From contig NC_047062.1 in the NCBI RefSeq assembly GCF_902459465.1, positions 9,114,001 to 9,178,000 of the forward strand: a stretch of 64,000 nucleotides of DNA, in the 5' to 3' direction. This DNA is from Asterias rubens (Eukaryota). Under the pieces are notes generated by a model, which did not search any database, was not told where the DNA came from, and saw only the letters and a program-made list of their open reading frames with translations. Made by a program: the position numbers and the translations under genes. Of this stretch, positions 271 through 49,800 are shown piece after piece; position 1 is the first letter of the stretch, and each line of letters starts with the position of its first letter.

Positions 271-447
271 ACATGTAGCTTATTTTGAACCGGCAAAAAA
301 ATTGTTATGTTTTTTATTACCCCAACATAAACACAACAACAAGCAGATGTAGACAGTGTTGCAGGTTGACTTCAGATGGAATCTTCATGTTATTAAAAAC
401 ATATTTCAAGGACTGGCAAATTTTCTTGTCACAAATAATCTACTTAC

Positions 448-661
448 AGGTGATCTTGCCTCTTGAAGCTCTTTGCGCAGAGTACACATTTGTGTCTCCT
501 CTCGCTGCTGTGTATCAGCTTGTGCTTCGCCAGGGCACTGGAGCTCCCAAAGATCTTACCGCACACCTGGCAGGGTTGCGAGTAACGATGCCCTGGGTTG
601 CGCGATGGTGGCCGCCCCTTCCGCCGAGGTGGCACATCAGTAGTACCGTCATTGTTGACCC
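448..661 (-). CDS. ZNF541: Zinc-finger exon of the ZNF541-like gene (214 nt, phase 1 to phase 2)
   Basis: Acceptor tttctttgaccag, donor gtaagta, open frame GVNNDGTTDVPPRRKGRPPSRNPGHRYSQPCQVC...QDHL with a basic NLS-like PRRKGRP followed by C2H2 fingers. Confidence 0.92.
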
Positions 662-3600: not shown

Positions 3601-6600
3601 AGAATGAATGAAAACTGTTTTCCTTGAAAGAAAAAAAAAATTATGTAGTGCTAGAACTTAGCATAGTCAACTAATAAACGTATTTTTTTCACAGCCACCC
3701 AAGGATAAGTAGACAACAATGGCACAAGGCCAGCATGTTCAGAACTGTGTGACAAACTCATTTCAACTCCTACCATACTGCATTGAACAGCGCCCTCATG
3801 TGGCTCAAAACTGAAAGCCATTTATAAATAATCTCAAAACGGATACACTGGACGGCAGGAACAGACTGAGTTTCATGAGTAACAGGCCTATAAAAAGTAT
3901 GCATGCTTTTTAAATAACAGTGCGGGACATGTAGCTAATGCATGCACGTTTACTCCGGCAATGTTCTGCTCTGCGCGGCATGTTACCAGCCCAGGGATCT
4001 GGGCTCATTTTCATACAGCTGGGCACTTTGGTAGCCCTATACAGGACTCTTACTCAGTGCTGCACACGGATACAGAGTCCTAACTATTAGGGTCCGTTTC
4101 TGGGCAGAAAGTTGTCAAAGCTTCATAACTCAAATCTTACCTGCAACAAGCCACTAATCTCAACAGATTCACATTCCATGGCAGCATACATTTTTCTGCG
4201 GTGGGTTTTGGTCGTCTTTTTCTTGAAATAATGCAGCTCCCAACGTTAAAAAATTCAAATTTTTTTTCGTTCTTACACAATGTTGTCTGCTGCCCTGCGT
4301 AAGCGTATACATTTGCGTGCAAGACGCAAGATGCAAGACGCATGTAACTCTTGGTCACCAAATCTTGACTGCACAGCGTTAACACGCAAACGCAATAAGG
4401 CCGGTTTATAGTCGCTGCAACTGCGGGCACGCACCTGACAATTCAAAATTTGATTTAAGGTTCATACTTCATAAAAATAAAAAATAAATAAGCATTAAGT
4501 TTGCGTTCGCGCGCAGAAACGAACGCGTCAACTTGTGTTCATACATTCGTCCGGTGGAAGGATTAAATAAAATGCCTTCCGTTCAAATCTTTATCGCAAA
4601 TTTCCACAATTTCCTTACATGAAATCACTGTCGTTTGACATGTGGTATTCTTTCAAGCTTATATTACACAGTTTTGGAAAAAGAAGCACCCTTTTTTGGC
4701 TTTTCGTATCAGTGCGCTTCCTTTTACGCTCTGCGGACTTTAAAAAACGGGTCCGAGCGCTGCGTACACAGTGAATACGCAGCGAGTATGAACCAACCTT
4801 AATGTGTGTCGTGTGTCTTGGGTACGCACGGCAGACTGAGAGAATTTGATCATAAACAGGAATTTTTTAATGATGGGAGCTGCATTATTCCACGAAAATG
4901 ACGGATTTGTTAAGAATATATGACGACCAAAACCCACTGCAGAAAAATGTGAATCTTTTGAAATTAGTGGCTTCTTGCATGTAAGATTTAAGTTATGAAG
5001 CTTTGAAAAATTTCCGCCCCCAGAAATGGACCCTGATATTCAGGACGTCACTGTTGTAATACGAAAGTGTGAGGACTGCCAGGGCCAGGTACTTTGGGTA
5101 CTTGTGTGACGTGAGACGGAGTTCACGTCTATTTTGTCTCATTTAATTATTGTGTATTTCTCCCTAAACAAGTAGAAAACTTACCTTTGAGATGTAAAAT
5201 TTAATTCATGTAAAAACAAGTGATATAGATCCGTACAATTCTCATAGATTACTTTAGTTCTATGCGACGAGATGATCGTTGTATGGGCGCCGCCATTGCA
5301 CACTCAGTTCATTAATATTCATTAGGTCTATGACTCGTGATTCGTCATACCAAATAAGGGAGACGCTGTTAGGACTTTCTTTCCTTAAATTAAGCTTGTA
5401 AAAGTGCAGAAAGACCTGGGGTTATTCATAAATAAGTTCACAATCATTACTTGTCTTAGTCTCGATTTATAAAACCTTACAACTTTCCTTTTATTAAGGG
5501 TTTTATTGCAAATGTTGTCTGCTTTTTTCGTAGCGCGCGAATCCTATTTTGCGTGGCTGCCTTCAGCCAATCAAAAAGCGGTAAGAAATTCGCGGCCTAT
5601 ATAAAGGGAAAGTTTTACAATGTATGTTCAGTTGCTGTAATAGAAGCTGTCCTAAATTATCAGGTTAGTGTTGGTTTGCTTATAACTTGAAATGAAATGC
5701 ACCCAAAATGATTTATTTACGACAAAATGTTTGACGATTGCTGGAAATTATAGTGTCATATTATTTTACATCTCAACACTCAATATAAAAGATTTGTGGC
5801 TTTTATTTGTGGAACTTTTTGTGTGCTGTATTTTACGTGAATATTGCTTAAATAAATCTCTCTATATAAATATTGTGTGCTGAATTATCGGATATTTTGG
5901 GCCACTCTTTACTGAATATCAGGAGAAAATTATCGGGTTATTGTACATAAATTATGCTAATTATTTAGTGAGTTGCTGTAATAGAAGCTGTCCTAAATTA
6001 TCAGGTATGGGGACAGTGGCAGCAACTCACTCACTCACCCTTAAGTACGGACTCCGCATTTGGAGTTACTCAGCAACCGACTCCGCATTGCGAGTCGTAA
6101 TATCAACTATATGCTTCGGGGCCGAACGTTAATTTATATACAATGTATCAACTCCGCATCGAGTCATTTAGCTACTATGGGGTCGGCGGAGCCACAGTAT
6201 AAATCCAGCCGGGGGCTGAAGGTATAGCTTAGGCTAATACTCGTCATAATGACTCCGCATCAGTATGATTAGCTACTATGGGGTCGGCGGAGCCACAGTA
6301 TAAATCCAGCCGGGGGCTGAAGGTATAGCTTAGGCTAATACTCGTCATAATGACTCCGCATCAGTATCATTAACTACTATGGGGTCGGCGGAGCCACAGT
6401 ATAAATCCAGCCGGGGGCTGAAGGTATAGCTTAGGCTAATATACTCGTCAGTAATGACTCCGCATCAATATTAACTACTATGGGGTCGGCGGAGTCACAG
6501 GATAGTTGCAGGCGGGGCTGATACTCGTCATAACTTGACCCGCATCGGTATTATTATAACTACTTGTTTAACGGCTCAGGGAGTCAAGGTTTAATTCCAG

Positions 6601-9600
6601 TCAGGGACTGAAGGTGGAGCTTGGAGCTACTACGCGTTTAACGACTCGGGGAGTCAAGGTTTATTCCAGCCTGGGGCTGAAGGTATATTAGTTATCATAG
6701 AAACTATTAGTACTCGTCTTTTACTCCGCATTTTGAGTCAGACTAGATGATTCGGCGGAGTAAACACAGTTAATGGAAAGGGGATCGGCACTAGCCATCT
6801 ATAACCAGTCCAAGAACTAGAAGAGAGTAATCCCAGCAAGGAGCTGATAGTAATATGAGTCAAGGTTTAATTCCAGTCAGGGACTGAAGGTGGAGCTTGG
6901 AGCTACTACGCGTTTAACGACTCGGGGAGTCAAGGTTTAATTCCAGTCAGGGACTGAAGGTGGAGCTTGGAGCTACTACGCGTTTAACGGCTCAGGGAGT
7001 CGAGGTTTAATTCCAGTCAGGGACTGAAGGTGGAGCTTGGAGCTACTACGCGTTTAACGGCTCAGGGAGTCAAGGTTTAATTCCAGTCAGGGACTGAAGG
7101 TGGAGCTTGGAGCTACTACGCGTTTAACGACTGGGGGAGTCAAGGTTTAATTCCAGCCTGGGGCTGAAGGTATATTAGTTATCATAAGAACTATTAGTAC
7201 TCGTCATTTACTCCGCATTTTGAGTCAGACTAGATGATTCGGCGGAGTAAACACAGTTAATGGAAAGGGGATTGGCACTAGCCATCTATAACCAGTCCAA
7301 GAACTAGAAGAGAGTAATCCCAGCGAGGAGCTGATAATAATATGGGCGGAGTAACACGTCCTACACTTAGTGTGTGCCAGTGGTTTTTATTATAAATGAT
7401 GTAAATAGAGAGACGTCTCACAGCAGTTTCAGAGTTAATAATTTTGATGGTTTTATGAGTTAAATAAATAATTGTTGAAACTGTTAGACATGTGTCAATT
7501 CCAAGTTTTTGAGTCCATTTCTTCACTTAATAATTGTAAGCTGCCTGGTTATATATTTTAGCCCAACGGACTTGGGGAAGTTAAATTTATTTGTATCACG
7601 GTGATAAGTGGTAGGAGATACTGTAGAGAGAGACAGCGCCCCCACCGACCGCCGCGTCACACTTGTTTTGACACAAACAGATTTACATTAAACTTACTCA
7701 GTTTGAAGATTATGGTGGTAGAAAGCTTCCCTTATGAGAAATGAGTAAAACAATGTCACAAATATAATTTTTCGTGACATTGTTTTACTAATTTCTACAA
7801 AAATACAGCACCTCAACAAAACTTTTACTAGATGTTTGTGTCAGACTTTATGGTAGTTGTTTCAAAACGGTATACATAATCTTCTTCATAATAACAACAT
7901 ACACTGTATCTGTGGAGTGTTAGCTTGATGACGTCATCATGTGTCAAGTGGTATTGCTTTAAAGGTGCACTTTTCAAAGCTGTGTGTCTGCCAAACCAAA
8001 AGTTCGACTGAGGTGAAACTTGGTGTATTGTTAGTCAAGGACATTAACTTCTTGTACTCGAAATGACATCATGATGACGTCATCATGTTGTTTTGACAAT
8101 TTTTGCAATTTGGATCATTTATTACAAATCTTGAGAACAAAGCAAGGTGCAATATTTGCTTTTTACACAAACTCTCAATGTCTAGTTAGGAGTAGCCTAT
8201 TTTCTGAAAGTATTTGAGTGTCAGCCCTGTTATGTTAACTGCTGCCATGATAACCGAAAAGCATACTCTAGTTGACTCGGGGAGAACATTACATCAACAC
8301 AAGTTTCTGGGTCATGATAGTGTTTGAGTTATGCCGTGACGGTGCAGCTACAGTGCCTTGAAAAAATTTACTGTTTCTGAATCATGGGCAGCTACATTGT
8401 AGATCAAGTTTTGTAAATGTATTTGTTTATAATTTATTATTTTGAAGGCAAGGCAGGGGAAATCCTATGTACATGTGTAGAATAAAATTAACCTGATGAA
8501 AATTATGTCCACGCAGCAGGAACAATATCTAATAGGAATACACAATCTGAGAAGCATTACTGAGATTAAAATTTGGGGGATAAAAACTGATATATTTTGT
8601 ACACAACTTCGAAGTGATTTTTTTGTTTTCTTAAAACTATTTTTACTATCGAAAGCTGCTGTAGGCTTCTAACCTAAAGATTTGTATTTCCATTAATTTT
8701 AAGAGTAATTACCAAACATGTACCTTCCCTTTAAGTATCTCAATGAACTCAAGCCCAGGTCTGTCCATTTAAAGGGTCTATGTACATTTTGTAGGACAAA
8801 AAAACACAATGTCTTCAGATTTACACTAAACTTACAGTTTGAAGATAATGATAGTAGAAAGCTTCCCTGAAAATATTACCTGCTGAGGTGCTGTAGTTTT
8901 TGAGAAATGAGTAAAACGATGTCATGAAAATAATTTTCGTCTCGGTGATCATGAGACGAAAATTATTTTAGCATGTAAAAACTTATTTTCATGACATTGT
9001 TTTACTCATTTCTCAAAAACGACAGCACCTTAGCAACTAATATTTTAAGGTACGCTTGTTACTATAATTATTTTCAAACGGTGTAAGTTTAATGTAAATC
9101 TGTGGACATTGTGTTTGTGTTACAAAAAGTACCCAATTCCTTTAACACAAAGTACTGTATCAGCTGGTCTGAAATTGAATAACCTGACTAGAAGCCTGTT
9201 GTGATGATGGATTGGTGGATGTCTATTCAATAAAATGTAAATGGTTTCTCTGAATTGGATATATAAAGAAGCTGTCTGCACATTGTAAAGAAGAGGAAGT
9301 ATTGTGCACAAATACATAATAAAGCAATTCTGCAACAAATCTGTGTCACAAAATGTGAGTACACAGTAGGTTTTAGATTAATTCTAAACAGGTAGGGCCT
9401 ATAGTTTTGGAATAATCAACACATTTTCAATTCATCTGTGAACTACAGACCTTCGGTATTTCAAAGTTGGTAATGGTACTGAATAATGAGTCAAATATTA
9501 TTAAAATTTTTTGTTTGTTTACCCATACACTGATGAAGCACTGTTTACTCTGTGCTTTCCCGAGTCCTGTGAAAAAAATATCACAGGCATGTTATTCGGG

Positions 9601-12600
9601 TGGGATTAGTACCCATGAGTGAAACATTGCCATGCAAAAAACTTCCATACAATTACAATTTAAGCAGAAAATATTTATTGCAGTTTGTGTTTCGTTGGTT
9701 TTCTGTAATCTAAAAAATTATATTGGGAAACAACTGAACTATGAAAGGTTCAATATGTTAATTTGAGGCATTAAAACGTTAATAATTGCATTTGTGATAC
9801 CAACCTTGAGAGGTGTTAATAAATGGAGTTTTGTAGAGTGCAAGCTCATAATCCTTGGATTGCAAATAAATCGTTGAAAATGTATACATAGTTTTGACTC
9901 ACACTTTTGAGTCCATCAATAATATCAACACTATTTACATTGTATTGAGTTAAAGACAGGCCTGGTTTATGTTTTAGGGTTTTTATAAGAGCTTCCAAGC
10001 TTTGACACAAACTTGCTCCAGCTAAACATATTGTAGACTGTATCAAATTTCAATTGCCATTATTCTCAAGCATCCATCCCCCTGACACAGGACAACCACC
10101 CAAATGTGAGAATGAGAGTTTGCATGTTTATACTAGAGAACTTATTCCACCATACCGACAGTCATAGAAATGAATAACTCAATGATTGGTCATGTTGGTC
10201 CAGACTTTTTACGGAGCACCCGCACATCATGTCTGTAGGATAGGTATCACATTATGTGTGAAGCATAATTCATTGTACAATCTTGTGAAGCAGAGTGTTT
10301 CTCAGAGCATAGAGTAGTCACACTATAGCCGGTTCATACATCTATGCGATCAGACAATATCCCCAGGATCGCGTTACAAAAATTCATTGGCGGACTGTCC
10401 CCAACATTTTAATAGACTCTGACAGCATTTACCCATTGAGAGTCGCTCCATGTATTCACGTATTCCCGTTCATCAACTTGCTTGATCAAGTACAGAATAC
10501 AGCATTGATTATGATATTTTGTCCAGGGTCAGTCTGCATGGACAATGACGCCGAATCGCTCCGGGACAGGTTCAAGATTGCCAATCTGATTATGATAATT
10601 CGGTTAGAGAAACTGTGCATTTCTGTTCCTGTAATTGTCTACAATTACGACAGGAATAACAAACTCTACTATTGGCAAACATCTTCATTTTAATTAGCGA
10701 ACAGTGAAACAGTGTTGACTTGTCCGTGATAGATGTTAAAATCAAACTGCATGGTTTTCTAGGATACAAATGTTCAATGTTCACTTACAAACGTATTCCT
10801 CTCAGGTGTTCATGCATTGAGTATTCACTTACATGTATGTACACTGATCTTTCTTTGATCACATCTTCTCTCAGATTATATAGTGGACACACAAATCTCA
10901 TTCTATTTGATTATTTATTTCCGGCTGAAACTTTTAACAATTGTTTTTTAGCTCGGGTACAACTTCCAGAGCTCAATGCAGGCCTGGTCATTTTCATTTT
11001 GCAAAGGGCACTTCCAATGGAAAATCTATAAGTGAATGGGAAAATCTGTAAGTGAATGGGAAACTTTTGAAGGGCACCCAAGCCAAGACCAGGGCCAAAT
11101 TTCATGGCTCTGCTAATACCGTAAGCACAGAATTGGCACTAACGGAAGCAGGGAATTCTGTGCTTACGGCATGCGTATTTCAGGGGTTAGCAGAAAATTT
11201 TGGCTTCTGCGTGTGCGTATGATGGAAAGCACAGAATTCGGCGATAAGCAGAGCCAAGAAATTGGGCCCAGGGCAGCAATGGAGGCCATGGCTTCCATGA
11301 CCTGCATGTTATTCAAGGCCTGTCAATGGTCTTTGGTGGTTTTTGATTTGGGATCCACAGTATACCGTCGCCAATATACCACCATATTTGGTAAATATTA
11401 CAGAGAACTTTTTATTTGAGCATGAATTCTAGTACCCTTTGTCCATCTTTGTACAAGGAAAGAGTTGCAATGTGAATGCATGGACTGTGCACGCTGAGAA
11501 ATTAAATGTCCTGGCGTGTTAGCATTCCAGTATTAAAAATGGGTACATTTTAAGCGGGTTCACTGACTGAAAGAAGTGTACGGGAATACACATTCACTCA
11601 TCAGCTTGTAAACTGTAAGCAACTTCACATAGGGTGTAACTAGTCCGAGTATAAAATTTGACTTTAGAGTATAAAACATATTTTTGTATGAAGCTAGTTT
11701 AACATTTCTTTAGTTAAACAGTCTAAAATCAGGTCAGACACTATTCTGTATTATTTTTTATTGCATTTCATAATTGTGATGTTATTTTGAATGTGTTAAA
11801 CTTTGCAAAAAGATGTGGTCCAGTTTTATACAAAGTGACTCAAGGCTTTCTGCTACATGTATTTAAGGGCAAGCTCTATGGTAGTGGTATTACATCTGGT
11901 TTTGAATAACAAAATTGTGGGTTTGTATCCCACCCAGGTTATACATACCGTACTCTTGAATATATTTTTTTCACAGCATTCAAGAAAGTACCAAGTATAA
12001 AGCGCTTAACATTATGGGTTAGAACAATAATTACATTCTTTATCTTGGTTGGTTGGTGCAAATTTAGCATCTATTAAAACAGTGTTTACAGTTAATCAAG
12101 GAACCAAACCCATTTTGCAGCACACTTTGTGAAGAGCAAAGCCATTGCCCCAATGTGCTTCAATGAGACTGTGAGAGTGGTAACCTGGAGAAACCACCTG
12201 CCAGCTGTGCTTAATTATTAGGCTAATTTTGGTAGAGATAAGGTTATGGACCCTTCTTCAATTTGAAAGAACGGTGTGGTATGAAATGTGCTAAACTGTA
12301 ATGGGAGATTTTGTGGACAACAAAGGATATGTCAGGGCTCGAATTTCACGCTGGACCGCAGGCCCGAGGCCAGTGATTTTAGCTTCGGTCCAGTAAACTT
12401 TATGCCGAACAAGTCCGGCGGTCTTGTGGTTTTTTTTTATGCATACTAATATAGTTACTACTACAAAATAATTATATGAAATATATTATCTTTCATTAAA
12501 AAATGTATTTCAATATTTCTGGTTTATCTTCGGTTTTAAGAGGTCAAAGTAGACGCAACCCCGTTGCTCTAACATCCGGTTTTATTAATCAGATTCACGC

Positions 12601-15600: not shown

Positions 15601-18600
15601 GACAATTTCATTCTCTGCCATATTTTGTACTTAGGCCTATTCTTTTTTTTCTCAAAGGGTGGCAACATTCACAGCGGATAACCAAACTTTTTATTTTTAG
15701 GGGGGGGGGGTGCCTGGGGATATACATAATTGTGGGGTCTATTTAATTTATCGAAACATTCATTTTGATTGCAAAAAAGTTGTTTCATGATTAAAGTAAA
15801 CTCATTAAATTGAGTAAGAAAAAGTTAAACAACTGGTGAACTTTGTGTTCATTTTCTTGAGTACGTGTTCATTAAACTTGGGTTTTGTTAGCGAGAGCAA
15901 AACGCTCTCCTTAATTCATTTTCTTGAATTAAGGAGAGCAATTTACAGCTCTCCTCGGATTTATTAAAATGAAGGCCTGCTTTAGTACGGCGTGTGAACG
16001 ACCTCAAAAACCCACATGCATTTCTGGCCCAGGACGTATCACAGCCGATGTCAACCACCACGCATGACTGGAAGTCAACCACCAGCATTTTGGGCAGCTT
16101 CTCTAACCTACCGACACGCAGCTCTTTGATCACCAAATTATATGTAAAAATCTACATGAACATACGTGTGCACGACAGCTAAATACGACTTTAAAGATTA
16201 GCGGGCGTCCTTTTCTTTGCAATGGAAAAGGAGCAGTGACTAGGACGCCAGCTCTGGTCTCTCTCTTTATTCCTACAAGTTTGTAATAGTTGATACCAAA
16301 AGCACATTCCACTAACTGGATGTGATTTATTCATCACAGGAACAATCAAATTAGTTTTGCCCTTCTCTACAGTACTTTAACTCTACCATGTACTTTACTT
16401 ACCCAACTTACCTTTATCTTGGCTTTTGTCCTTTTCAATACATTTACATGTATTTTCTTTCAGTAGTTGTACAATGCCAATATGCTTCTACCAAAAGCAA
16501 GAGTTTAAGTTTGCAACACCGCTGTTTAATGGTACACAAGCGCATATGTACAGTAACTAGCAAAATACAACATTACACTGTTCATAAGTTTCTCTTCTCT
16601 TTTTGCCATAACAATTCAAAATTCATGTAAGTATTATGTAGAAGTGTATCACAACAAAGATACTAAACAACCTTGTCACAATTACATTTTCCCCATGCAA
16701 CAATGACAAATTTATGCAGTCTACAGTGTACATCACTCGGTCATGAATTTTTCATTAAAATGTTCATGACATACATGTACTACATGTAGTAAACTTTCTT
16801 TTTTGAATACATTTATGAGGTCATAGAGTGAACAGCAGTTGTCTGCATGTACTTGTCACTCCGGTTTTATTTGCAACCACTGCTACTGCAGTAAAATTTG
16901 TCAGAAGATAGATATGTTACACAGGTCCACCTTGCATTATTATCAAATATGTACAGTATGTGAAATAATTTGGTGACAAAAAGAGTGTGTCATTCACATG
17001 TACCAACAGTAGTTTGCCACCACCAACAAAATAACCAACATTGTGCCAATCATAGTCAAACATAGCACTTTGAGTCAAATTCATAATAAATTCCTATCAC
17101 AGGTTCATACTTCCTGCAAAGCAAATTTTCTTGCGTCACAATTTCCTAAACAAAGCATACCAGTTATTACGTCACCAAAAAATCGCTTTGCATTCGCAGG
17201 AAGTATGAGCCAGGCTTATGAACTTACTCAAATCAAATAAATTGAGAGCAAACCCAACAATAAAAATTGTTTACGTACCTATTGAGGTAGATGATTTACC
17301 ATCTGGTGGATTTTTGCCGCCACCGATTCCTAACACCCCTCCTCGCCCCATCGCTCTGGGTACACTTGCCATCACATCGCTCCCAGATGAGGATCCAATG
17401 CTTGGCAGGGAAGTTGTAACATGAACATCAGGATCAACATTACCGGGTAGCGGCTGCGGGGAAAGCGAGTCCGTCATGTAGTTGGCTTCATCAACATCTC
17501 CACCTCCATCAAAAAGGTCAAAGGCTTCATTGTTCACACTCGGTGGGCTGGAATCCATTCCAGTGAGATTGGAAGAATCAGTTAGGCGTGTGCCGCCGGG
17601 ATGTCCAATTCCCATAGACCCGCTTAGGAAGTTATCATCCAAGGTTCCAGTTACTGAATTATCTGTTATCAGACCATGCTCCTGAAGGAGCTGGTCGTCA
17701 TTGTAATTGATCATGCTCAGCATCTGATCGGCGGATGTCCGATAGGGCATGGCTGGACTGTTACTGTGTCGAGACAGCGAAGCTGGACTGTCTTGACTTG
17801 GCTCTGAGAAGGCTACAGACACACTTACAGATAACGGCAGCATGGATTTATCAACAAGGTGACCACCAACACCATCGGACATAGTCTGCATGTTGGGCGA
17901 GGTTTTATCATTGTTATTCTCATTGTGATGTTGGTGGGCAAGGACCAAGTTGCCTCTGATATCCTTGGTCAATTGCCTCTCACCCTCTTTGGCAGGTTTT
18001 CCATCAAACATGTGTGTTCCTTGCTGCCGCAAGGGGATCATGTTCATAGAAGACTGTCCACTTTGAAAAGGTAGGTTATCCCTTCCAAATGTAAAAGACT
18101 CACTGATAGGGAAGCCAAGCGCCTTGTCCATGACCTTACTATATATGTTTGCGACACTGGGGTTAAACAGTGTCTGACCCCCAGCCATGGCATGCTGGGC
18201 AACTGCAGGGAAGCCAGCTATGGCCGGATCTGATCCCCTCAGGGGTAGCCTTCCAGTAGTTTGATAGTTATTCCAGTCACCTAGATGAGGTAGCAGATTC
18301 CTGACCTGTCGGCTCATGTTCAACCTTGGCTGTTGGAATGGGCTCAAGAACTGTTTCACATCGGCTGACTGACTGAGATTCAAGGGCTGTTGCGGGAGGG
18401 CTGTCAGGTGCTGCTGACTAACATGCAAGTAGTCCCGCTGCAAAAAATGGCCTCCTTGATGACTTGCCTGGCTGGTTGATAAGCCTTCTCCGATTCCCAC
18501 TGAGTTGTTACCGAGTAGGTTACCTCGATCTGCTGATGTTAAATCTGCAAGAAGCTCCGGAGGGATCTCCTGACTGGAATCAAGGAGGGGGAGACTACGA

Positions 18601-18857
18601 CTTCGCTGTACGGGCTGGCAAGGAGGTGACAACGAGTTGCTAACATTGGAAGGTGTCGAAAGGGTGGTGGGGAGCATTTCATTGTTGCCTGGCAGGACAG
18701 TAACCGGATTCTGCATGCTGTCCAGAGATGAGCTTCGCTGAACAGCTGCAGGCACTGTCTGAGCTTCATTTTTAACCATACTCAAGTTGCCGTCCATACC
18801 AGATAAGGCCATGTCTGTGTTTTGAGGGCCCAATAAGGGATCCTTTGATGTCTTGAC
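448..18857 (-). CDS. ZNF541: ZNF541/TRERF1-like C2H2 zinc-finger transcriptional regulator, partial; supported exons 18857-17279 and 661-448, 3' part lies left of the window
   Basis: Exon 661-448 encodes CQVCGKIFGSSSALAKHKLIHSSERRHKCVLCAKSFKRQDHL, which matches from memory the N-terminal finger pair of ZNF541 (C..CGK.F.S.S.L.KH.L.HS.ER.H.C..C.K.FKRQDHL). The phase-1 donor at 17278 (ATA G|gtacgt) joins the phase-1 acceptor at 662 (ccag|GG) in frame. Orthology is not tested by search. Confidence 0.72.
4089..5034. mobile_element. MITE with ~110-bp imperfect terminal inverted repeats
   Basis: AGGGTCCGTTTCTGGGC...GTGGGTTTTGGTCGTC is mirrored at 4923-5034; no clean TSD. Confidence 0.8.
5567..5633 (+). 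promoter_or_regulatory. Candidate Pol II core promoter (CCAAT, TATA, Inr), antisense to the host gene
   Basis: CCAAT 5567-5571, TATAAAG 5600-5606, TCAGTT 5628-5633 with the A at 5630 exactly 30 nt after the TATA T. Motif evidence only. Confidence 0.5.
5630..6006 (+). repeat. Exact 36-bp direct repeat pair (5630-5665 and 5971-6006)
   Basis: AGTTGCTGTAATAGAAGCTGTCCTAAATTATCAGGT occurs twice, each ending in a CAG|GT donor-like site. Confidence 0.95.
6050..7360 (+). repeat. Complex tandem array: about 4 x 101-bp units (6151-6560), 70-bp units (6581-6650 and 6857-7136) and two copies of a ~206-bp block (6651-6856, 7137-7343), all with related hairpin modules
   Basis: Periods read directly (ACTCCGC at 6151, 6252, 6353, 6457; GAGTC at 6857, 6927, 6997, 7067, 7137). 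Shared core CCAGYCNGGGRCTGAAGGT occurs in 10 full and 3 degenerate copies. Confidence 0.95.
8773..9141. mobile_element. Palindromic TTAA-flanked MITE; partial relative at 7680-7900
   Basis: TTAA at 8769-8772 and 9142-9145; the arms are inverted around GAAAATAATTTTCGTCTC...GAGACGAAAATTATTTT. Confidence 0.82.
10200..10700 (-). mobile_element. Highly decayed CR1/L2-like LINE fragment
   Basis: Minus-strand ERFGVIVHAD*PWTKYHN resembles the LGV..D..L.W..H.N motif downstream of the RT core; many stops. Confidence 0.35.
11093..11268. mobile_element. Harbinger-like MITE with CAG TSD; relatives at 20640-20870, 37252-37397, 48858-49601 and 56403-56570
   Basis: TIR GGCC(A/C)AATTTC(A/T)TGGCTCTGCT; CAG on both sides. 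Confidence 0.8.
13905..14060 (+). repeat. Imperfect direct repeat pair of about 75-80 bp
   Basis: CGTGCTTGATG(A/T)TTACCGCAGCCGGTCACACAGACG...TTCCACACTGGT twice. Confidence 0.85.
14280..14486 (+). pseudogene. N-terminal fragment of a hAT (ZNF862/Tip100-like) transposase inside a composite DNA-transposon remnant (about 12333-14973)
   Basis: SSVQLSTFLRW...VTKIWCKVCRTYIDKIK resembles the zinc-binding N-terminus of such transposases. Possible TIRs CAGGGCTCGAA (12333) and TCGAGCCCAG (14964-14973), with no matching TSD. Confidence 0.45.
17279..18857 (-). CDS. ZNF541: Large 1579-nt exon of the ZNF541-like gene encoding an S/P/Q/G/M-rich, probably disordered region
   Basis: A 520-codon open frame bounded by acceptor ttttcacccccag|GTC (18858) and donor G|gtacgt (17278). 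The first in-frame ATG is at 18812 (gacATGG). Confidence 0.85.
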
Positions 18858-24852: not shown

Positions 24853-27800
24853 ATGAGTACCACTATCCCCTGCCCAGCACCTGCCTGCACCATGACATGG
24901 CCCACTTCCACACTTCGAGGTATTGCTCAGCCTGATCAATCTGCATGGGAGGACTGCTCACCCAGTCGACCAGGCCCCCACACCTGCACCTGCCCCAGGG
25001 GCAGCCAAGGCTGAGAAGGTGAAACGGCCTGCTATATTGGCAGCTGGCACAAGTGAAGAATGGGCGTACTTTGAACAACAGTGGTCAGACTACAAGGCAG
25101 CCACACATCTCACAGGCTCAGACATCGTCTTCCAGCTTCTTGAGTGTTGCGATGAGGCACTTCGCAAAGACCTCACACGGACCTTCGGTACCCTCGCCTC
25201 CAGTGATGAACAGACCATTCTCAGCAACATGAAGACACTCGCCGTCCGTCAGGAAAACATAATGGTCTCACGGATGCAACTCCAACAAACGCGCCAGGAC
25301 CGCGACGAGCCAGTACGGGCCTTCTCAGCCCGCCTCAGAGGTCAGGCAGGAGTATGTAGTTTCAAGATTGAGTGTACCTGCAAAACACAGGTCGATTACA
25401 GCAACATTATGATTAGGGACGCTCTCATCCGGGGACTCGAGGATGAAGAGATCCGCTTGGACATTCTCTGTGAATCGAGACAAGACATGTCGCTGGAGGA
25501 GGCACTCAGGTACGTCGACGCCAAGGAGAGTGGCAAGAGGTCAGCTAGCCGCCTCCTTGAGGGCGGCACCACTACAACTGTGTTGGCCGCTAGCTCCTAC
25601 AGGCGCCAAGAGAGGGGGCGACTGCGAACCCTACCTGCTACTACGGGACCCGCAACCTCGCTCTGCGGTCACTGTGGCAAACCAGGCCACGGACGTGGCA
25701 GACAGGACCGTATGAAGAAATGCACAGCCTACAACCACAAGTGCACCAAATGTGGCATCCTTCACCACTACGAAGACGTTTGTCGTCAGTCACTGCGCAA
25801 GCAACACCAGCCAGCAACCCTCACCGTACCTCTACCAGGAGATGACGCCACCGCCATCTTTGACTCCCTATGCTCCGTTAGCGATATCCCGACACACAGC
25901 GCCCATGCAATCACACTCCAGCACCATGTCTACAATGAGTTCTGCGATGCTTGGGAGAAGCGGGCATCCGACCCCCAACCCTTCATCGATGTCTCCATCA
26001 AGGCTGTCCCGTCCGATGCCCGAGCCCTCGGCTTCCCCACCTCCATCCTCAGCCCAACTTCCGCTGTCTCCTACCCTGCCATGGCCGACACTGGATGCCA
26101 GTCATGCTTAGCTGGCACGAAGCTCCTACCCAAACTAGGACTCAGTAGGCATCACCTCCTCCCTGTCACTATGAAAATGACTGCTGCCGACAACCGTAGC
26201 ATTGACATTGCAGGTGCCATTGTCCTGAGAATCTCTGGGACTTCCCCTTCAAAGGAGACAATTGAGACGCGTCAAATAGTATACTTCACTGACTCCTCTG
26301 ACAGGCTGTTTTTATCCAAACAAGCTTGTGTAGCCCTCGGCGTGATATCTCACAAGTTCCCCTCAATTGGTGAGGCACACGAGCCTAGCAGTACCAGTGT
26401 CAATTCCTGCAACGCCCCCGATGTCAAGCACCACCACCTCCTCCCACATCACTCCCACTCCCAGCCACAGAGGAGAACCGAAATAGGCTTGAAAAGTGGC
26501 TGCTCGAACACTACCAGTCAAGCACCTTCAATGTATGCGAACATCAGCCACTTTCCATGATGTCTGGCCCCCCAATGCACCTCATGATCAAGCCTGACGC
26601 TCAGCCGGTGGCTCACCACACGCCCATCCCTGTCCCTGTTCACTGGCAGGACGACGTGAAGGCAGGCCTAGACCAAGACGTTCGCCTCGGTGTCATTGAA
26701 CCAGTCCCTATCGGCACACCCGTTACTTGGTGCCACAAAATGGTGAACTGCCCCAAGAAGTCAGGCAAGCCAAGGCGGACAGTTGACCTCCAACTACTTA
26801 ACCACCATGCTCTCCGTGAGACACACCACACCCAGTCACCCTTCTACCAGGCACGTACAGTACCCCCTCACACACGCAAGACTGTCTTTGATGCATGGAA
26901 TGGCTACCACAGCATCGCCCTTGATGAACGAGACGGCCACCTCACAACATTCATCACCCCATGGGGTCGCTATCGGTACCGAGTTGCCCCACAAGGCTAC
27001 ATCGCCTCGGGAGACGGTTACAGCCGCCGCTTCGACGAGATCGTTTCAGACATCCCACGGAAAACCAAGTGCGTAGACGACACCCTTATGTGAACTGACA
27101 CGATTGAGGAGGCATTCTTCCAGGCAGTTGAATGGCTAGACATTTGTGGCCGTAACGGCGTCACACTGAACCCCTCTAAGTTCATATTTGCCCAGACAAC
27201 AGTGGAATTCGCGGGCTTCGAACTCACCCCAACCACTGTACGTCCCTGCCCTCGCTATCTTGAGGCCATCCAGAACTTCCCTACCCCCCACAACATCACT
27301 GATGTCCTCAGCTGGTTTGGCCTGGTCAACCAGGGGTGCGTTCCACTCGCGCAAACGTTGCCAACAGTTGCGCACGTTCGCCAACAATTTCTAGTGGAAC
27401 GAGTTGTTCGCCGCCACCGTTGGCGAACGTTGGCAACTTTAGGCGAACATACTTCGGAGGTGTTGGCGAGTGATTTTTAAAATGGCGGACAAGCATACGG
27501 TATTATTTCTTTGTCACAAACATAATTACATTGTATTTTCGGTGGATGATAATGCAGATTTGGAATAACAAAGTTAATTAGTTGATGTAATGATGTCAAA
27601 AAGAGGACTATTGCAGCAAAAACGAAGTTTTAAAAAAAACCTACGTATGGTTCGCGCCATCTTCAATTCAGGGCACCGCCATATTGACATCGCGTATACG
27701 CACCAGTTGCGAGTCGTTTGCGCGAGTGGAACGCACCCCAGGTCTCATACGCCTTTGCCGCCACTGAATGAATGCTGCCCTTCCACCAACTCCTCAAACA

Positions 27801-29740
27801 GGGCACCCGTTTCATCTGGACAGACCAATTGGACCGTCTCTTCCAGGAGTCTAAGTCCCTGATCATCAATGAGATCCATAAGGGGGTGGAGATCTTTGAC
27901 AAGACCAAGCCGACCTGCCTCGACACTGACTGGTGCAAAGAGGGTCTTGGGTTCTGGTTGTTCGCGAAGCACTGCACCTGCTCTTCCTCCAACCCCTTTT
28001 GCTGTAAGACTGGTTGAAAAATTACCCTCGTCGGAAGTCGCTTCACTTCGGGGGCTGAATCCCGCTATGCCCCAGTGGAGGGGGAGGCCCTAGCAGTTGT
28101 TGATGCACTCGACAAGGCACGTCACTTCACACTTGGCTGCTCTGACCTCATCGTTGCAGTGTATCACAAGCCCCTCCTGAAAACATTCGGCGACCGCTGC
28201 CTCAACGACATACCCAACCCTCGCCTGCGCAACCTCAAAGAGAAGTCTCTTCGCTACCGCTTCCGCATCGTTCACATACCCGGCCTACGCCACGCCGCAG
28301 CCGACGCCGTCTCTCGCCACCCTGTTGGCAAGCCAACGCCGATGACCCTCCCAGATGATGTTGCAACCGTACTCAACCCCCACACTCAGCTCCCCACGTT
28401 TGAACTGCCACACTCCTTCCTCAGGGCCCTTAGCACACTCGATCAGGACACAGCTCATGTTTGCTCCCAGGCGACCTCACCTCCCACTGCAGTGATTAAG
28501 TCAGTTACGTGGGATGACGTCTGCCTTGCTACAGTCAGTGACCCCTCCATGTCAAGATTGATTGACCTCATTGATGACTTCCCTGTGCTCCGTGGTGACC
28601 TTCCTCCTGAACTCCGCCAGTATCACCAGTTTCGTGACGGCCTGACCAGTTTTGACGGGGTAGTCCTCTACAACGACCGCATTGTCATCCCCCCATCCAT
28701 CCGCGATCGCATACTTCAGGCCCTGCACTCAGCTCATCAGGGTGTCTCACAAATGTGTTCACGGGCGGAATCATCATTCTTCTGGCCAGGTATGACACCT
28801 GCTATTACAGAGATGCAGGCACGCTGCTCATCATGCAACCGCATGGCACCCTCACAGCCGAACGCACACCCCACCCCTCCACTCAACCCAGTCTACCCAT
28901 TCCAGTGCCTTGTGTCCGACTACTTCCACTACCGTGGCCGGCACTACTTGGTGGCTGTGGATAGATACAGCAACTGGCCAATTGTGGAAGAATCTGCTAA
29001 TGGCGCGGCCGGACTTATTTTTGCCCTGCGTCGCATCTTTGTTACCTACAGCATCAGTGACGAACTAACATCCGATGTCTAGCACAACAACCACATTCCT
29101 GCGCCATTGGGGTGTGACCCATCGCATGTCATCGGTCGCCTTCCCCCACAGCAATTGCCGTGCAGAAGTGGGAGTAAAAACTGTGAAAGGCCTCATTACA
29201 GACAACACAGACGCCAATGGCTCACTGAACACAGACGCGTTCCAGAGGGCCATGCTCCAGTACCGCAACACCCCTGACCGCGAAACGCACCTCTCTCCAG
29301 CCATGTGCATCTTCGGACGAACCATTAGAGACTTCATCCCCATTCATCCTGGCAAGTACCAACCCCACACGACATGGAAGGCGACCCTCCTCTCGCGGGA
29401 AGAGGCCCTGCGCAACCGCCACATGCGTGCTGCTGAACGCCTTTCCCAACACACACGTGTCCTTCCCCCACTAGTCGTTGGGGACTTTGTCCGCATCCAA
29501 AACCAGACAGGCCCCAGCCCCACCAAATGGGACAAGACTGGTATCGTGGTTGAGGTGCGCCAGTTTGACCAATATGTCGTGAGAGTGGATGGCTCTGGAC
29601 GTGTCACACTTCGTAACAGAAAATTCCTTCGCAAGTATATGCCCGTGCTACCCCGTGCACCTTTGGCTATGGCCCCCGGCCCAGCAGCAGTCTTGATTTC
29701 TCCAGCCAAGGTGGCAACACCTGCATCTCGCCGCCCTGTC
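24853..29740 (+). pseudogene. Disrupted gag-pol polyprotein of the Gypsy element
   Basis: Gag CGHCGKPGH...C and CTKCGILHHYEDVC; protease MADTGCQS; RT DAWNGYHSI, APQGY, KCVDD; RNase H TDWCKEGLG, EGEALAV, ADAVSR; integrase H.AHQG...C..C, DYF, TSD, RAEVGVK. Lesions: frameshifts near 24910, 26420 and 29075; TGA stops at 27091, 27769 and 28015; MITE insertions at 27334 and 29741. Confidence 0.95.
27334..27738. mobile_element. PIF/Harbinger-like MITE (405 bp) inserted in the Gypsy RT
   Basis: Perfect 24-bp TIR GGGTGCGTTCCACTCGCGCAAACG; 3-bp TSD CAG at 27331-27333 and 27739-27741; removing it restores WFGLVNQVSYAF. Confidence 0.93.
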
Positions 29741-30349
29741 CAGACATGCCAACCTCTGGGATCACAAAACTGTATTCTGAAACCCCAAAACCTGTATTTT
29801 GCATCAAAAACCTGTGTATTTTTTTTTTAACACGCGTAAACGTAGTTTTATACCCCGAGACAGGCAAAATAGAGGTGTGAAGGCCATTAAGTTATCAAAC
29901 AGCCTAATTAAACCAGTTAATTAAAATCTCGCTTCAGGCGCTCTATATCTTTTGTGTCTTTATTTTGACAAAAAATTCTTTTGCAAACTCGATTCGTCCG
30001 TTCACAAAACGACCGATACCATATAAGGGCATTTGACAACAGCACCCTCTGTTGTTCAATGAATTGTGTTAGACGGGTTCCCTGTGAAATCGGGACGTCA
30101 GATAAACTGGCGTGTAGTATGCAATGCAGGTTTGTGCTACTAGCGTGCGTGCAATGATGGATGCGAGGGAATCTCCGTTGCGCTGTGGTGAAAGTTGAAT
30201 AAGGAATACCCCCGTGGAATAATAGAGTTCACTGGATAATCATTATCGGCCGTAAGTAGTCGGCCGAAAACTTATTTGTGTCAATAAAAAAATATTGAAC
30301 TTGAGTTAAAAAAGGGCACGACGGCCAACTGGGATAAAATTGTATTTTT
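29741..30349 (+). mobile_element. Second, right-truncated copy of the CAGACATGCCAAC element, inserted at the end of the Gypsy integrase
   Basis: About 185 bp of the left end and about 300 bp of the right part are near-identical to 23381-24100; the central segment differs and the right TIR is missing. Confidence 0.88.
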
Positions 30350-46800: not shown

Positions 46801-49800
46801 CAGACTCTCACTTGGAGTAAGCTAAGTTTCATCCTGTTAGATCAAACTGACTCCCTTGCACATTAACTCTGATGTTTGTTGTCTTCAGGTATACAACCTC
46901 ACCCAGAACATCCAGGAAGATGATCTTCATCATCTGCAACTCTTCACTGAGTATGGACGCTTAGCTATGGAAGACAGCAGCAACAAACCATTCCAGGTAT
47001 ACAAACTTTATGCGAATGTTCTGCCATACCTTCATTTGAGACCAGATAACTTGGCGTATCAAAATGCTATCACTATCAGTGTACTCTCCTGCACTTTCCT
47101 TGCTTTTCCACAAAACACCACAAAGGACCGTCAGTGTCACCCTGCAGGCTCTTTCTACAGAACACCACAAAGGACTGTCTGTGTCACTCCTGCCCAACCA
47201 GCTCTTTCCACAAAACACCACAAAAGACTGTGGAGACCAAGTCCACAGTGCACAAGCCATAGCCATGGCGTTCCCACATAGTACTAGCTGCACAAACAGA
47301 AGATCCACATGCCCATTGGTAGCCTATAACTCTTTGTTCACAGATCATGGACATTGAGACTTGCATATTGACTTTTACGTCACACTCTTGACTTGTGTGG
47401 CTGAGTTAAGCTTCCATTAATATAATGGGTTTTTTTTTTTAACTGTAAATTTCAGCTTTTAGCTTCTGTTTTGCCATGAATAAACCATGATCAATATAAT
47501 TCATGTACTGCTATTTTCCTATAGTCGTTGATGTTTCTGGTAAGGGATTGGAGCTACCCTTATGAATATGACTACGGAGCCGAAGGAGGAAATCTAGTCT
47601 TGGAAAAGAGAATTAAGGTAAATCACTTTAAAGGTATCCCACATTATTGGTTAGGATTCAAAAACATTGTTGTATAGTCTGAAAGCTTACCGAGTATGAA
47701 GTTCATATTAAAGAAACTTGTATCTTGAAAACTAAACATGCATCTGGTTTCTAGCAGATTTGAGTGAATGTTAAAGGAACACTACAGAGTTGGTTTTGCT
47801 GACAAAAGAGTTGCTGGCAGTGTAGGCATTTTATGTAATCCACCATATCCATAAACTGACTAACCTGTAGAAGTTTGAGATTGATCGGCCATTTTGGTCA
47901 CGAGAAAATAGTTAAAAACCGATTACAATTTTTGCATGACATTGATGCAAACAAAAAAATGAATTAGACGCTCACTGAGCGATAAACTCCAAATGCAAAG
48001 TTTAATTATTTATTTCTTATCAAATACGACATTTCAGGCAGAAATATTTCAAGGAATGTTTTCTATCATCATTAAATCGTGTAAATAAAAGTTTGATGTA
48101 AATCTGTGATCTTCACGAATCACGATTTTGTTTCTTACCAATTCTGTAACGTTCCTTTAGGTAAGATTTGAAACTTAGCATGGTGGAAATACAATATAGT
48201 AAGGTTTGCGGCAACACCATGTAATGATAATCTCTAAATGAGTTGGAGTGGTTCTGAAAAGAACCATTGGTTTCAACTCTGGAATAAATGTTGTTCACCT
48301 TTCTGTGTCAACTCTGCAATGAATTATCTCTCTAATTCTTAAAGCAAACGGGAAGCAAACACGAAGAACTCCGCCAAGTTCGTCGTCACATCCACGCTTG
48401 CTTTGAGAAGATCAGCTGTTTCCTGATGCCCCACCCTGGTATGGCCGTTGCACGCAATAGAGAATTTGATGGCCGATTGTCAGGTGAGACTTACTATAGT
48501 GAGAAAAATATGAATAAGATGTGGATCAGTTTGGTGTAATAATTCCAACTCTGTGTTTGTCCTTTGGATTGGGCGCAAAGCCCTTAAGGTCTTGTACAGT
48601 ATGTTGTTTAATATGTTTAGAGCACAGATTAGACAGCGCATTTATCAGTGTCTCTGGCATGGTCGGCAGCAGCTTGCACTCAAAAGCCTCACAAGTAGCT
48701 ATATAAATAGATTTGATTCAAGATGGTTTATTAGGCCAATCCCATCACTTGCAAAATCAATTATTATGACATGTATGAAATACAAAATCAAATACAAGAA
48801 TTCAAATCAATATGAAGCCTTGAAATGCCTTTAGATAAAGCGCTGTGTCACAGGCCTGCCCCCGATTTCACGAAGCGCTGCGACGCGTCGCAAGTGCAAG
48901 TTGCGACCGGTTACACGTCGTAAGTTGCGATGCGTATGAAATCGATTTCATCAAAGTTACAATGCGTTGGATCTGTCGCAAGTTCCTTGACAACGAGGGA
49001 GGACACGTCGTAAGTTACGACTACCCATAGGGTCGTCGTAAGAATGCGATGTTTCATTTGGTTACGCACAAAATGCATGAAAGGACATAACAATTACCAC
49101 ACGTAACTTCCTTGAACCAATCGAGAAGACACTAGACAACAAATGGAAATTTACCCTCCCCCCCCCAAAAAAAAAAAGGATGGGTAAAAGAAAAGAAAAC
49201 ATGCACACGCATAACAAACGAACACACACACACAAACTATTAAAAACAACTAATCAAATAAATAATTATAAACCAACCAAAAATCCCAAACCTAAACACT
49301 AGTCCGAAACGGTTGAGTGTCTGGGACTGTCTGCCATCTTGAATGAACCATAATACACGACTGTTTCATGACCAAGTTGTACACAACATAAAACAGCCGC
49401 AGAACTTTAGCAGTTCATCCTCGTCCAAAGGGTTGTTTTTATTAAGAGTGAAAATAGTGTGTATTGCGACTCGTCGCGCTTACGACGTGTTTGGTGAAAT
49501 GGATTATGGAACTCGTCGCAGCCCAACGTGTCTTAGGTCTGCGACGCATCGCAAACCCTACGATACGTCGCTTCTTGCGATGAGTTTCGTGAAATCGGGG
49601 GCACGAGTTACACGAAAAAAAATAAGAAGAAAAAAATGGTTTATTTATTTTAAAATGTCATCGCAGCATACCGCTGAATTGCGACATGATTTACATTCGT
49701 TAAAAATATTACAATAATTATTAAAAAGCTTTACAATAGAAACTACGTAGTGAGCATTTGATTAAAAAAATCCCCAAAAAGCAATGGAAAAAGCAATGTT

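What the first reader, a model, noticed from the sequence alone, without database searches (positions are those of the whole stretch)
6050..7360. Repeat array whose different unit types share one covarying hairpin/three-way-junction fold
Seen: the 101-bp, 70-bp and ~206-bp units differ in sequence but keep the same ordered modules. Hairpin II is CAGCC-NGG-GGCTG or CAGTC-AGG-GACTG (C-G swapped for T-A). A fixed AAG linker follows. Hairpin III has a conserved bulged A: GTAT-AGC-ttag-GCT-A-ATAC, GTGG-AGC-ttgga-GCT-A-CTAC, and GTAT-ATTAGTT...AACTATT-A-GTAC. A closing GAGTC/GACTC or GGAG/CTCC stem completes it. The 70-bp unit can close into a three-way junction with linkers TTC, AAG and GCG. Every non-Watson-Crick pair in these stems (GTGG/CTAC, GTAT/GTAC, GGCTC/GAGTC, GAGTCA/TGATTC) is G.U on the + strand and would be an A.C mismatch on the minus strand. 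Inference: selection has acted on a + strand RNA or ssDNA structure. Candidates are an unrecognised self-cleaving or protein-binding RNA motif, or a replication/recognition module of an unknown mobile or viral element. It matches no ribozyme core I know. This is the best candidate for an undescribed system in the window.
Basis: partly seen in the sequence, partly recalled or inferred. Interest (0 to 1): 0.78.

Follow-up and report, generated by a model that had tools for sequence, protein, structure and literature searches.

The report
Hairpin-rich tandem repeat, echinoderm noncoding locus
A real but probably ordinary tandem repeat: one old ~100-base unit carrying two short hairpins was recently copied many times inside a low-copy, partly conserved noncoding stretch of an echinoderm-like genome. 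The hairpins do seem to be preserved, but nothing shows a ribozyme, a virus or a plus-strand-only structure.

Summary
The array exists as described: 101-bp units (6151-6504), 70-bp units (6567-6647, 6857-7133) and two long units (6648-6856, 7134-7344). All share one ordered set of modules. The unit types are paralogues of one ancestral unit. A related contig (L031, 76-81% identical) has the same leader and tail but only two short units and one long unit, so the expansion here is young and lineage-specific. Hairpins II and III are the best-kept part. The 70-bp type differs from an L031 unit at 17 of 70 columns, yet all 13 pairs form (25 of 20000 random trials). The rest of the reading does not hold. 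Single units fold no better than shuffles. A strand-symmetric count gives 21 G.T against 20 A.C mismatches. The minus strand folds about as well, and Rfam finds nothing. No other copy, terminal inverted repeat or mobile-element or viral protein lies nearby. My best guess, held weakly, is a plus-strand noncoding transcription unit that displays repeated hairpin modules. A functionless minisatellite or a low-copy transposon remnant remain serious rivals.

The parts
5567..5605 (+). CCAAT (5567) and TATAAA (5600) motifs. They sit about 26-30 nt upstream of the first 36-mer copy and look like a promoter (inferred only).
   Evidence: Sequence reading and motif positions. No transcription data.
5630..5665 (+). 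36-nt leader sequence, copy 1, ending in CAG|GT.
   Evidence: Exact duplicate of 5971-6006. There is no homology on either side of the two copies.
5859..7532 (+). Whole segment shared with the related contig L031: leader, repeat units and tail. Homology fades gradually on the 5' side, near the end of the L031 contig, and stops sharply at 7532.
   Evidence: blastn and MAFFT against L031 give 75-81% identity. Identity is uneven along the segment: chi-square 31.4, 10 df, p=0.0005.
5967..6031 (.). Strong leader hairpin. Its 5' arm is 36-mer copy 2 (5971-6006) and the CAG|GT lies in the loop.
   Evidence: MFE -30.1 kcal/mol, z -5.45 on the + strand and -5.50 on the - strand. The inner stem is kept in L031 and the outer stem is weaker there.
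6048..6097 (+). Two small hairpins built on the ACTCCGC motif. 88% identical to L031.
6151..6504 (+). 101-bp units x3.5. Each holds an ACTCCGC...GCGGAG inverted repeat, hairpin II, the AAG linker and hairpin III.
   Evidence: TRF 94% matches. Covariance-model hits at 6186-6258, 6287-6359 and 6388-6463.
6489..6566 (+). Degenerate or transition unit. Hairpin III is deleted and hairpin II is damaged.
   Evidence: Weak model hit of 15.9 bits at 6489-6543. Sequence reading.
6567..6647 (+). Single 70-bp-type unit ahead of the first long unit.
6648..6856 (+). Long unit 1. It has hairpin II (CAGCC-TGG-GGCTG), a lengthened hairpin III, an ACTCCGC...GCGGAG hairpin and an ~85-nt tail-like segment.
   Evidence: The tail-like segment is homologous to 7247-7344 at 97%.
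6857..7133 (+). 70-bp units x4. The MFE and the consensus fold are a three-way junction. The last copy has a broken closing stem in this allele.
   Evidence: The broken stem is intact in L037.
7134..7344 (+). Long unit 2, 96% identical to long unit 1. It closes the 487-bp higher-order repeat.
7345..7532 (+). Conserved tail. It holds the only + strand AATAAA of the segment (7463), also present in L031, followed by a block (7489-7528) in which 38 of 40 aligned columns match L031.

Best explanation
The array is a young, lineage-specific copy-number expansion of one older ~100-nt unit. The duplications have periods of 101, 70 and 487 bp. Each unit carries an ACTCCGC/GCGGAGT inverted repeat followed by two short hairpins joined by AAG. 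The array lies inside a low-copy noncoding segment of about 1.7 kb (5859-7532) that a related species also has, with only three units. The unit types share their modules because they are paralogues. The 70-bp type is a 101-type unit that lost the interior of its first hairpin.

Mechanism I commit to, weakly: the segment is transcribed on the + strand, and the repeated two-hairpin modules act as a multivalent platform for an RNA-binding protein, so that expansion raises valency. The transcript would start at the 36-nt leader, which follows a TATA/CCAAT promoter-like stretch at copy 1 and a conserved upstream block at copy 2. It would end at the conserved AATAAA at 7463.

Shown: the array, the paralogy, the expansion relative to L031, the pairing-preserving changes in hairpins II and III, and the uneven conservation.
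Inferred: transcription, its strand, and any protein binding.
For: - Array and module order.
- L031 has the same leader, two short units, one long unit and the same tail at 75-81% identity. Units within the window are 96-99% alike.
- Pairing is kept: 92% of cells paired, three pairs changed on both sides; 13 of 13 pairs in the 70-bp type after 17 of 70 changes, matched in 25 of 20000 random trials; stem columns differ at 4% against 19-23% elsewhere between species.
- RNAalifold recovers the fold independently.
- Conservation is uneven, p=0.0005, with peaks at the leader, the hairpin II-III module and the tail.
- There is one conserved + strand AATAAA near the 3' end and none inside the array, against seven or more signals on the - strand.
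- Low copy number: no second copy in 64 kb, in L006 or in the other loci. Only one near-identical ORF hit was found in 5.8 billion protein clusters.
Against: - There are no expression data.
- Single units are not more stable than shuffles.
- There is no strand preference.
- Individual units are decaying: an A.A break, a lost hairpin III and a broken closing stem.
- The covariation rests on about two events in one lineage. In L037 the hairpin II variant moves as a block of three linked changes, which looks like conversion between units or an assembly mix.
- RNAalifold's covariation term is only -0.4 kcal/mol.
- The number of pairs changed on both sides is not above the shuffles (229 of 500).
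- The donor-like GT after the leader is poorly conserved beyond GT in L031.
- L031's species and its neutral divergence are unknown, so some of the conservation could be shared ancestry alone.
Confidence: 0.35

Rival explanations
1. The array is a functionless complex minisatellite. Replication slippage and unequal exchange amplified a quasi-palindromic unit. The hairpins are inherited dyad symmetries, and the apparently compensatory changes come from template-switch mutation or conversion between units, not from selection.
For: - Copy number differs between relatives, and the copies here are very young.
- Fold stability is no better than chance and shows no strand bias.
- Units with broken stems are tolerated.
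- The hairpin II change is a cluster of three substitutions within 7 nt, and in L037 it moves as a block.
- Template switching can create and maintain stems in one event (PMC8794818).
- The lengthened hairpin III of the long units looks like a newly made inverted duplication.
Against: - Stem columns are the slowest-changing part between species.
- Conservation is uneven, with strongly kept leader and tail blocks.
- The multi-unit architecture predates the split from the L031 lineage.
Confidence: 0.3
2. The array is the internal or subterminal repeat region of a low-copy non-autonomous transposable element. The short ACTCCGC motif in both orientations would serve as transposase-binding sites, as in hAT- or CACTA-type subterminal repeats.
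For: - The 7-nt motif recurs about 8 times forward and about 7 times inverted.
- Homology with L031 stops sharply at 7532, and the rest of L031 (2.3 kb) matches nothing in the window.
- MITE-like insertions are common around the locus.
Against: - No terminal inverted repeats lie at the homology bounds.
- No second copy of leader, tail or unit was found in 64 kb plus 21 kb of a relative.
- No transposase-like domain was found in the neighbouring ORFs tested and none is evident in L031's ORFs, which were not scanned against Pfam.
- 5' similarity fades gradually instead of ending at a sharp edge.
- Identity is uneven, unlike neutrally decaying copies.
- No transposon library was available, so a named match could not be tested.
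Confidence: 0.2
3. The array is double-stranded cis-regulatory DNA: a cluster of palindromic transcription-factor sites near the developmental gene castor. From memory, TGACTCC/GGAGTCA and TGAGTCA resemble bZIP/AP-1 or MARE-type sites, and GCCNNNGGC in hairpin II resembles an AP-2-type site.
For: - Dyad symmetry works equally on both strands, which fits the lack of strand bias.
- The locus lies in a landscape with conserved noncoding blocks.
- The motifs are read directly from the sequence.
Against: - Symmetric double changes in a palindrome (GCC..GGC to GTC..GAC) would destroy both half-sites instead of preserving binding, yet pairing is what is preserved.
- The motif resemblances are recalled, not tested.
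- No homologue of the segment was found in the part of L006, the more distant relative's castor contig, that was fetched.
Confidence: 0.1
4. The units are an undescribed self-cleaving RNA in a retrozyme-like tandem repeat, or a single-stranded DNA hairpin origin of a rolling-circle or parvovirus-like element.
For: Tandem units of 70-100 nt with a three-way junction recall satellite and retrozyme hammerheads and T-shaped terminal hairpins.
Against: - No Rfam family, ribozymes included, matches at E<=10 on either strand.
- By eye, the hammerhead core motifs are absent.
- The junction linkers and closing stem vary or break between copies.
- No Rep, NS1, capsid or reverse-transcriptase domain was found in the ORFs tested between 285 and 15158, that is within about 6-8 kb on either side.
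- The five viral-contig pattern hits are single chance matches with no extended similarity.
Confidence: 0.04

Closest known systems
Complex minisatellites and higher-order tandem repeats in noncoding DNA
   Same: Head-to-tail copies at 94-99% identity, several nested periods (70, 101 and 487 bp), and a copy number that differs between relatives.
   Different: The unit is older than the expansion and is shared across species. Its two hairpins keep pairing through sequence change.
Long noncoding RNAs with tandem structured repeats (Xist A-repeat, roX stem-loop repeats, NORAD repeat units; named from general knowledge)
   Same: Repeated short stem-loop modules separated by spacers, inside a promoter-to-poly(A)-signal-like unit of 1.5-1.9 kb.
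   Different: Neither transcription nor a binding protein has been shown here, and there is no sequence similarity to any of these RNAs.
Smaug/Vts1 recognition element (a stem-loop with loop CNGGN0-3 on a non-specific stem; PMC4053848)
   Same: If the innermost C-G pair is counted as loop, hairpin II reads as a 4-bp stem plus loop C-N-G-G-G in every copy in both species. N varies (G, A, T) and the loop-closing pair covaries.
   Different: The motif has very low information content and is common by chance. Hairpin III has U, not C, at the first loop position. There is no evidence for an mRNA context or for binding.
Subterminal repeats of hAT- or CACTA-type DNA transposons (general knowledge)
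   Same: A short motif reiterated in both orientations over several hundred bases.
   Different: No terminal inverted repeats, no visible target duplication, no second copy and no transposase nearby.
Hammerhead-bearing satellites and retrozymes
   Same: Tandem units of about 70-200 nt with a three-way junction.
   Different: No covariance-model match and no catalytic core.

Membership tests
Known self-cleaving ribozymes (Rfam hammerhead, twister, twister-sister, pistol, hatchet, HDV-like and others) | A match to the family covariance model (conserved core plus helices) | tested here: not met
   No match in the array at E<=10 on either strand, including small slices with lax filters. The same holds for L031.
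Retrozyme or hammerhead satellite | Tandem repeat units that each carry a hammerhead motif | tested here: not met
   Tandem units are present but there is no hammerhead hit.
Tandem repeat / minisatellite | Head-to-tail copies with high identity | tested here: met
   TRF scores of 596 and 567. Repeat families D1-D4.
Tandem repeat / minisatellite | Copy number varies between related genomes | tested here: met
   L031 has two short units and one long unit, against about 13 units here.
DNA transposon with subterminal repeats | Terminal inverted repeats at the element ends | tested here: not met
   No inverted pair lies at 5859 and 7532. The only pair involving these ends (15 nt, 87%) falls 120 bp inside the 3' bound.
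DNA transposon with subterminal repeats | Multiple dispersed copies with different flanks | tested here: inconclusive
   None in the 64-kb window, L006 or the other loci. The whole genome was not available. L031's 3' flank differs.
DNA transposon with subterminal repeats | A match to a catalogued element (Repbase or Dfam) | not testable with these tools
Parvovirus-like or rolling-circle terminal hairpin | Location at the end of a unit that encodes a Rep/NS1-type protein | tested here: not met
   No such Pfam domain in the ORFs of 70 aa or more that were tested between 285 and 15158.
Smaug recognition element | A stem-loop whose loop begins CNGG (CNGGN0-3) on a non-specific stem (PMC4053848) | tested here: met
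   All 10 window copies and both L031 copies read C-N-G-G-G between the CAGY and RCTG arms. One L031 copy has an A.A in the stem.
Smaug recognition element | Presence in a transcript and binding by a SAM-domain protein | not testable with these tools
   No expression or binding data.
Structured-repeat lncRNA | A transcribed unit with its own promoter and 3' end | tested here: inconclusive
   CCAAT and TATAAA lie upstream of leader copy 1 and a conserved AATAAA lies at 7463. These are motifs only.
Structured-repeat lncRNA | Covariation supporting the repeated stem-loops | tested here: inconclusive
   Three pairs are changed on both sides, from about two events. Shuffles reach that pair count 229 times in 500. 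A substitution-placement test gives P about 0.001.

The most novel reading that the evidence does not exclude
The segment 5630/5971-7490 is an undescribed echinoderm noncoding RNA gene. Its core is a repeated two-hairpin module: a CNGGN-loop hairpin, an AAG linker and a bulged-A hairpin. The module would recruit a hairpin-binding protein, for example a SAM-domain Smaug-type protein, in many copies, and copy number would evolve quickly between species.
Probability: 0.1. Interest if true: 0.65.

Novelty: new member of a known kind. Interest (0 to 1): 0.33.

Why it matters
If the hairpin module proves to be transcribed and conserved across echinoderms, it would be a compact case of a structured RNA module whose valency changes by tandem duplication. 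It would also offer a natural test of selection against template-switch mutation as the source of compensatory changes. If it is not, this is one more lineage-specific minisatellite. The finding then shows mainly how paralogous repeat units can mimic independent covariation.

Tried and rejected
- Rfam at gathering and at E<=10 on the window, on array slices and on L031: nothing in the array.
- Pattern scans. The five viral-contig hits were all single chance matches. Leader and tail patterns found nothing in viral contigs or in bacterial and archaeal genomes. The one metagenome scan gave 29 loci, of which only L031 is a true relative.
- Protein-route searches for more copies. The 82-aa ORF gave only one same-locus contig, L037. 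The 63-aa ORF gave nothing. Exact look-ups of three array ORFs gave nothing.
- The window's own short ORFs are not in that collection, so a blank result would say little.
- A covariance model of the unit found no extra copies in the window or in L006, L007, L031 and L037 beyond the known units.
- The spliced-leader RNA idea for the 36-mer: no Sm-like site between the stem-loops, a poorly conserved donor in L031, and a 14-paper search hit list that I did not read, so it neither supports nor excludes trans-splicing in echinoderms. Left open as unexplained.
- Sequence strings from the array searched in the paper library: no paper.
- Orthologous position in L006, whose castor exon is 80% identical: no array within the 21.6 kb held. 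The expected position is close to the end of that locus, so absence is not proven.


Full report
**What the window is.** The window has 38-43% G+C over most of its length, a CpG observed/expected ratio of 0.63 and no N. A 520-aa open exon at 17271-18833 (-) finds castor-like proteins. The best named hit is from the sea urchin Lytechinus at 44% identity, and an unnamed one reaches 80%. A 3.7-kb contig from an ENA metagenome assembly is 99.7% identical to the window. The source is therefore an echinoderm-like animal and not human. The array lies about 10 kb from the castor exon. No significant protein domain was found in the ORFs tested between 285 and 15158.

**Checking the observation.** The array is real and is unique in the window.
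- Tandem Repeats Finder gives period 101 x3.5 at 6151-6504 and period 70 x4.5 at 6857-7171.
- The repeat finder adds a 198-nt pair 487 bp apart at 96% identity. The long '206-bp' unit is thus part of a higher-order repeat made of 70-bp units followed by one long unit.
- The hairpin II module occurs ten times, all between 6205 and 7171, against 0.01 expected.
- The module order, the two hairpin II versions, the fixed AAG linker and the three hairpin III versions read as the finder described.
- The 70-nt three-way junction is the MFE. RNAalifold returns it as the consensus for 11 units.

**What the unit types are.** One metagenome-collection contig, L031 (JACSEG010003758.1, read on its minus strand), is a true relative.
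- It aligns to window 5859-6292 and 7287-7532 at 75-81% identity.
- It has the same leader, the same small ACTCCGC hairpins, two 103-nt units, one long unit and the same tail.
- Units within the window are 96-99% alike, far closer than window against L031.
- The basic multi-unit layout is therefore old, while the expansion to about 13 units is young and specific to this lineage.
- The alignment of units (A3) shows that all types are paralogues. The 70-bp type is a 101-type unit in which the interior of the ACTCCGC...GCGGAGT hairpin is reduced to GACTC-GGG-GAGTC. The long type is a unit followed by a tail-like segment that L031 also has.
- The shared modules thus reflect common descent, not convergence.

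**Is pairing preserved?** Partly, yes.
- On A3, 92% of pair cells are standard pairs, against 24-48% when partners are slid. Three pairs change on both sides.
- The 70-bp type differs from L031 unit B at 17 of 70 aligned columns. Five of these fall in the 26 stem columns of hairpins II and III, yet all 13 pairs form. Random placement of 17 substitutions achieves this in 25 of 20000 trials.
- Between the window's 101-type unit and the L031 units, stem columns differ at 4% and other columns at 19-23%.

Several caveats apply.
- The structure was chosen after seeing these sequences.
- The changes amount to about two events in one lineage.
- The count of pairs changed on both sides is not above the shuffles (229 of 500).
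- RNAalifold's covariation term is only -0.4 kcal/mol.
- In L037, a 97.6% identical copy of the same locus from another metagenome, the long unit carries the 70-type hairpin II as a block of three linked changes. That points to exchange between units, or to an assembly mix.
- Template switching during replication can create and repair stems in one step (PMC8794818).

**Is it a plus-strand structure?** This is not supported.
- RNA z-scores for single units are -0.26 and -0.78 on the + strand, against -0.89 and -1.98 on the - strand. The long unit gives -2.5 on + and -2.6 on -.
- DNA parameters show no preference for the + strand either: z is -0.6 on both strands for the 70-nt unit, and -0.93 (+) against -1.71 (-) for the 101-nt unit.
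- The consensus fold energy is -10.1 kcal/mol on + and -9.15 on -.
- On the - strand hairpin II is 7 bp long because of an invariant U.G that is a C.A mismatch on +. The three full 101-bp units carry an A.C in the ACTCCGC/GCGGAG stem.
- A stem finder that treats both strands alike counts 21 stems with an internal G.T and 20 with an internal A.C. Perfect stems are enriched (27 against 14.6 +/- 3.7 in shuffles), so the region is rich in dyad symmetry without strand bias.
- The whole region folds to -455.6 kcal/mol on + and -411.9 on -. The + strand is G-rich (356 G against 261 C), which favours wobble pairs by composition alone.

**Known families.**
- No Rfam family matches the array at E<=10 on either strand, in the window or in L031.
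- The covariance model built from the units finds only the known units.
- Leader and tail have no second copy in the window or in L006.
- No terminal inverted repeats bracket the segment.
- The viral-contig pattern hits are single chance matches.
- A transposon library was not available, so the finder's own refutation test (a match to known subterminal repeats) could not be run.

**The surrounding segment.**
- Identity to L031 is uneven. Non-overlapping 40-column windows give 25 to 38 matches (chi-square 31.4, 10 df, p=0.0005). The peaks lie just upstream of and within the 36-nt leader, at the small hairpins, at the start of the tail and at 7489-7528.
- The 36-nt leader occurs twice with no mismatch, at 5630 and 5971, and nothing around the two copies is homologous.
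- Copy 1 begins 26 nt after TATAAA, with CCAAT further upstream.
- Copy 2 is the 5' arm of a hairpin with z -5.45 and is 92% kept in L031.
- The only + strand AATAAA of the segment lies at 7463, is shared with L031 and precedes the best-conserved block. The - strand has a signal in nearly every 70-bp unit.
- Together these are compatible with a + strand Pol II unit of about 1.5-1.9 kb. They are motifs only, not proof.

**Verdict.** The hairpins appear to be preserved. The claims of plus-strand selection, a ribozyme or a mobile or viral module are not supported.
- I commit, at 0.35, to a recently expanded array of an old hairpin module inside a low-copy conserved noncoding unit. It probably acts as a + strand RNA that displays many copies of a protein-binding two-hairpin module.
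- A functionless minisatellite whose stems are maintained by template switching is nearly as likely (0.3).
- A low-copy transposon remnant (0.2) and a cis-regulatory cluster (0.1) follow.
- One lead is noted but not tested. Hairpin II reads as a C-N-G-G-G loop on a covarying stem in every copy, which fits the published Smaug recognition element loop definition (PMC4053848). That motif is too simple to carry weight on its own.

- L037 contains a run of N, which was left as it stands.
The consensus units that Tandem Repeats Finder prints were not used.
- The substitution test scrambled an existing unit inside the script for a count only, and kept nothing.

Noticed in passing
window 5630-5665 and 5971-6006: An exact 36-nt duplicate ending in CAG|GT, with no homology on either side. 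Copy 1 follows TATAAA and CCAAT. Copy 2 forms a hairpin with z -5.45 and is 92% conserved in L031. These could be alternative first exons or a leader; the question is unresolved.
   Followed up: partly
window 4102-5019; 7677-7818; 8802-9116: MITE-like inverted-repeat elements flank the segment. The one at 7716-7813 gives sub-threshold miRNA-family hits (35.6 bits against a gathering score of 80). L037 diverges from the window at 7662, just before one of them, which suggests an insertion polymorphism.
   Followed up: partly
window 24923-29830 (+): A G+C-rich LTR-retrotransposon-like pol remnant. Reverse transcriptase (RVT_1) and the integrase zinc-binding domain hit separate ORFs, and the reading frame is split over at least four ORFs, so it is broken several times.
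   Followed up: no
window 17271-18833 (-): A large open exon of a castor-like transcription factor gene. It is 80% identical to a protein on a 46-kb ENA contig (L006) and 44% identical to Lytechinus castor-like.
   Followed up: partly
window 10473-10647: A conserved noncoding block shared with L006 at about 68-76% identity, with homeodomain-like TAAT cores. It is the only alignable noncoding stretch between the two contigs apart from repeats.
   Followed up: partly
window 444-635 (-): An open frame with an AT-hook-like RKGRP stretch followed by C2H2 zinc-finger motifs. It is probably an exon of a different gene on the minus strand.
   Followed up: no
window 46856-47281 (+): A fragment matching the guanylate-binding protein N-terminal domain (Pfam GBP, E 2e-7). 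It overlaps a 47-bp tandem repeat at 47105-47231.
   Followed up: no
window 51072-51161 (+): A tRNA-Leu(CAA)-like sequence of 90 nt. Short similar pieces occur in L006, so it may be part of a tRNA-derived repeat.
   Followed up: no
L031 940-1021 and about 2050-2330: The part of L031 that does not match the window carries a 24-bp tandem repeat and a reiterated CATTCAA-type motif just past the homology break. This may be an insertion that hides synteny.
   Followed up: no
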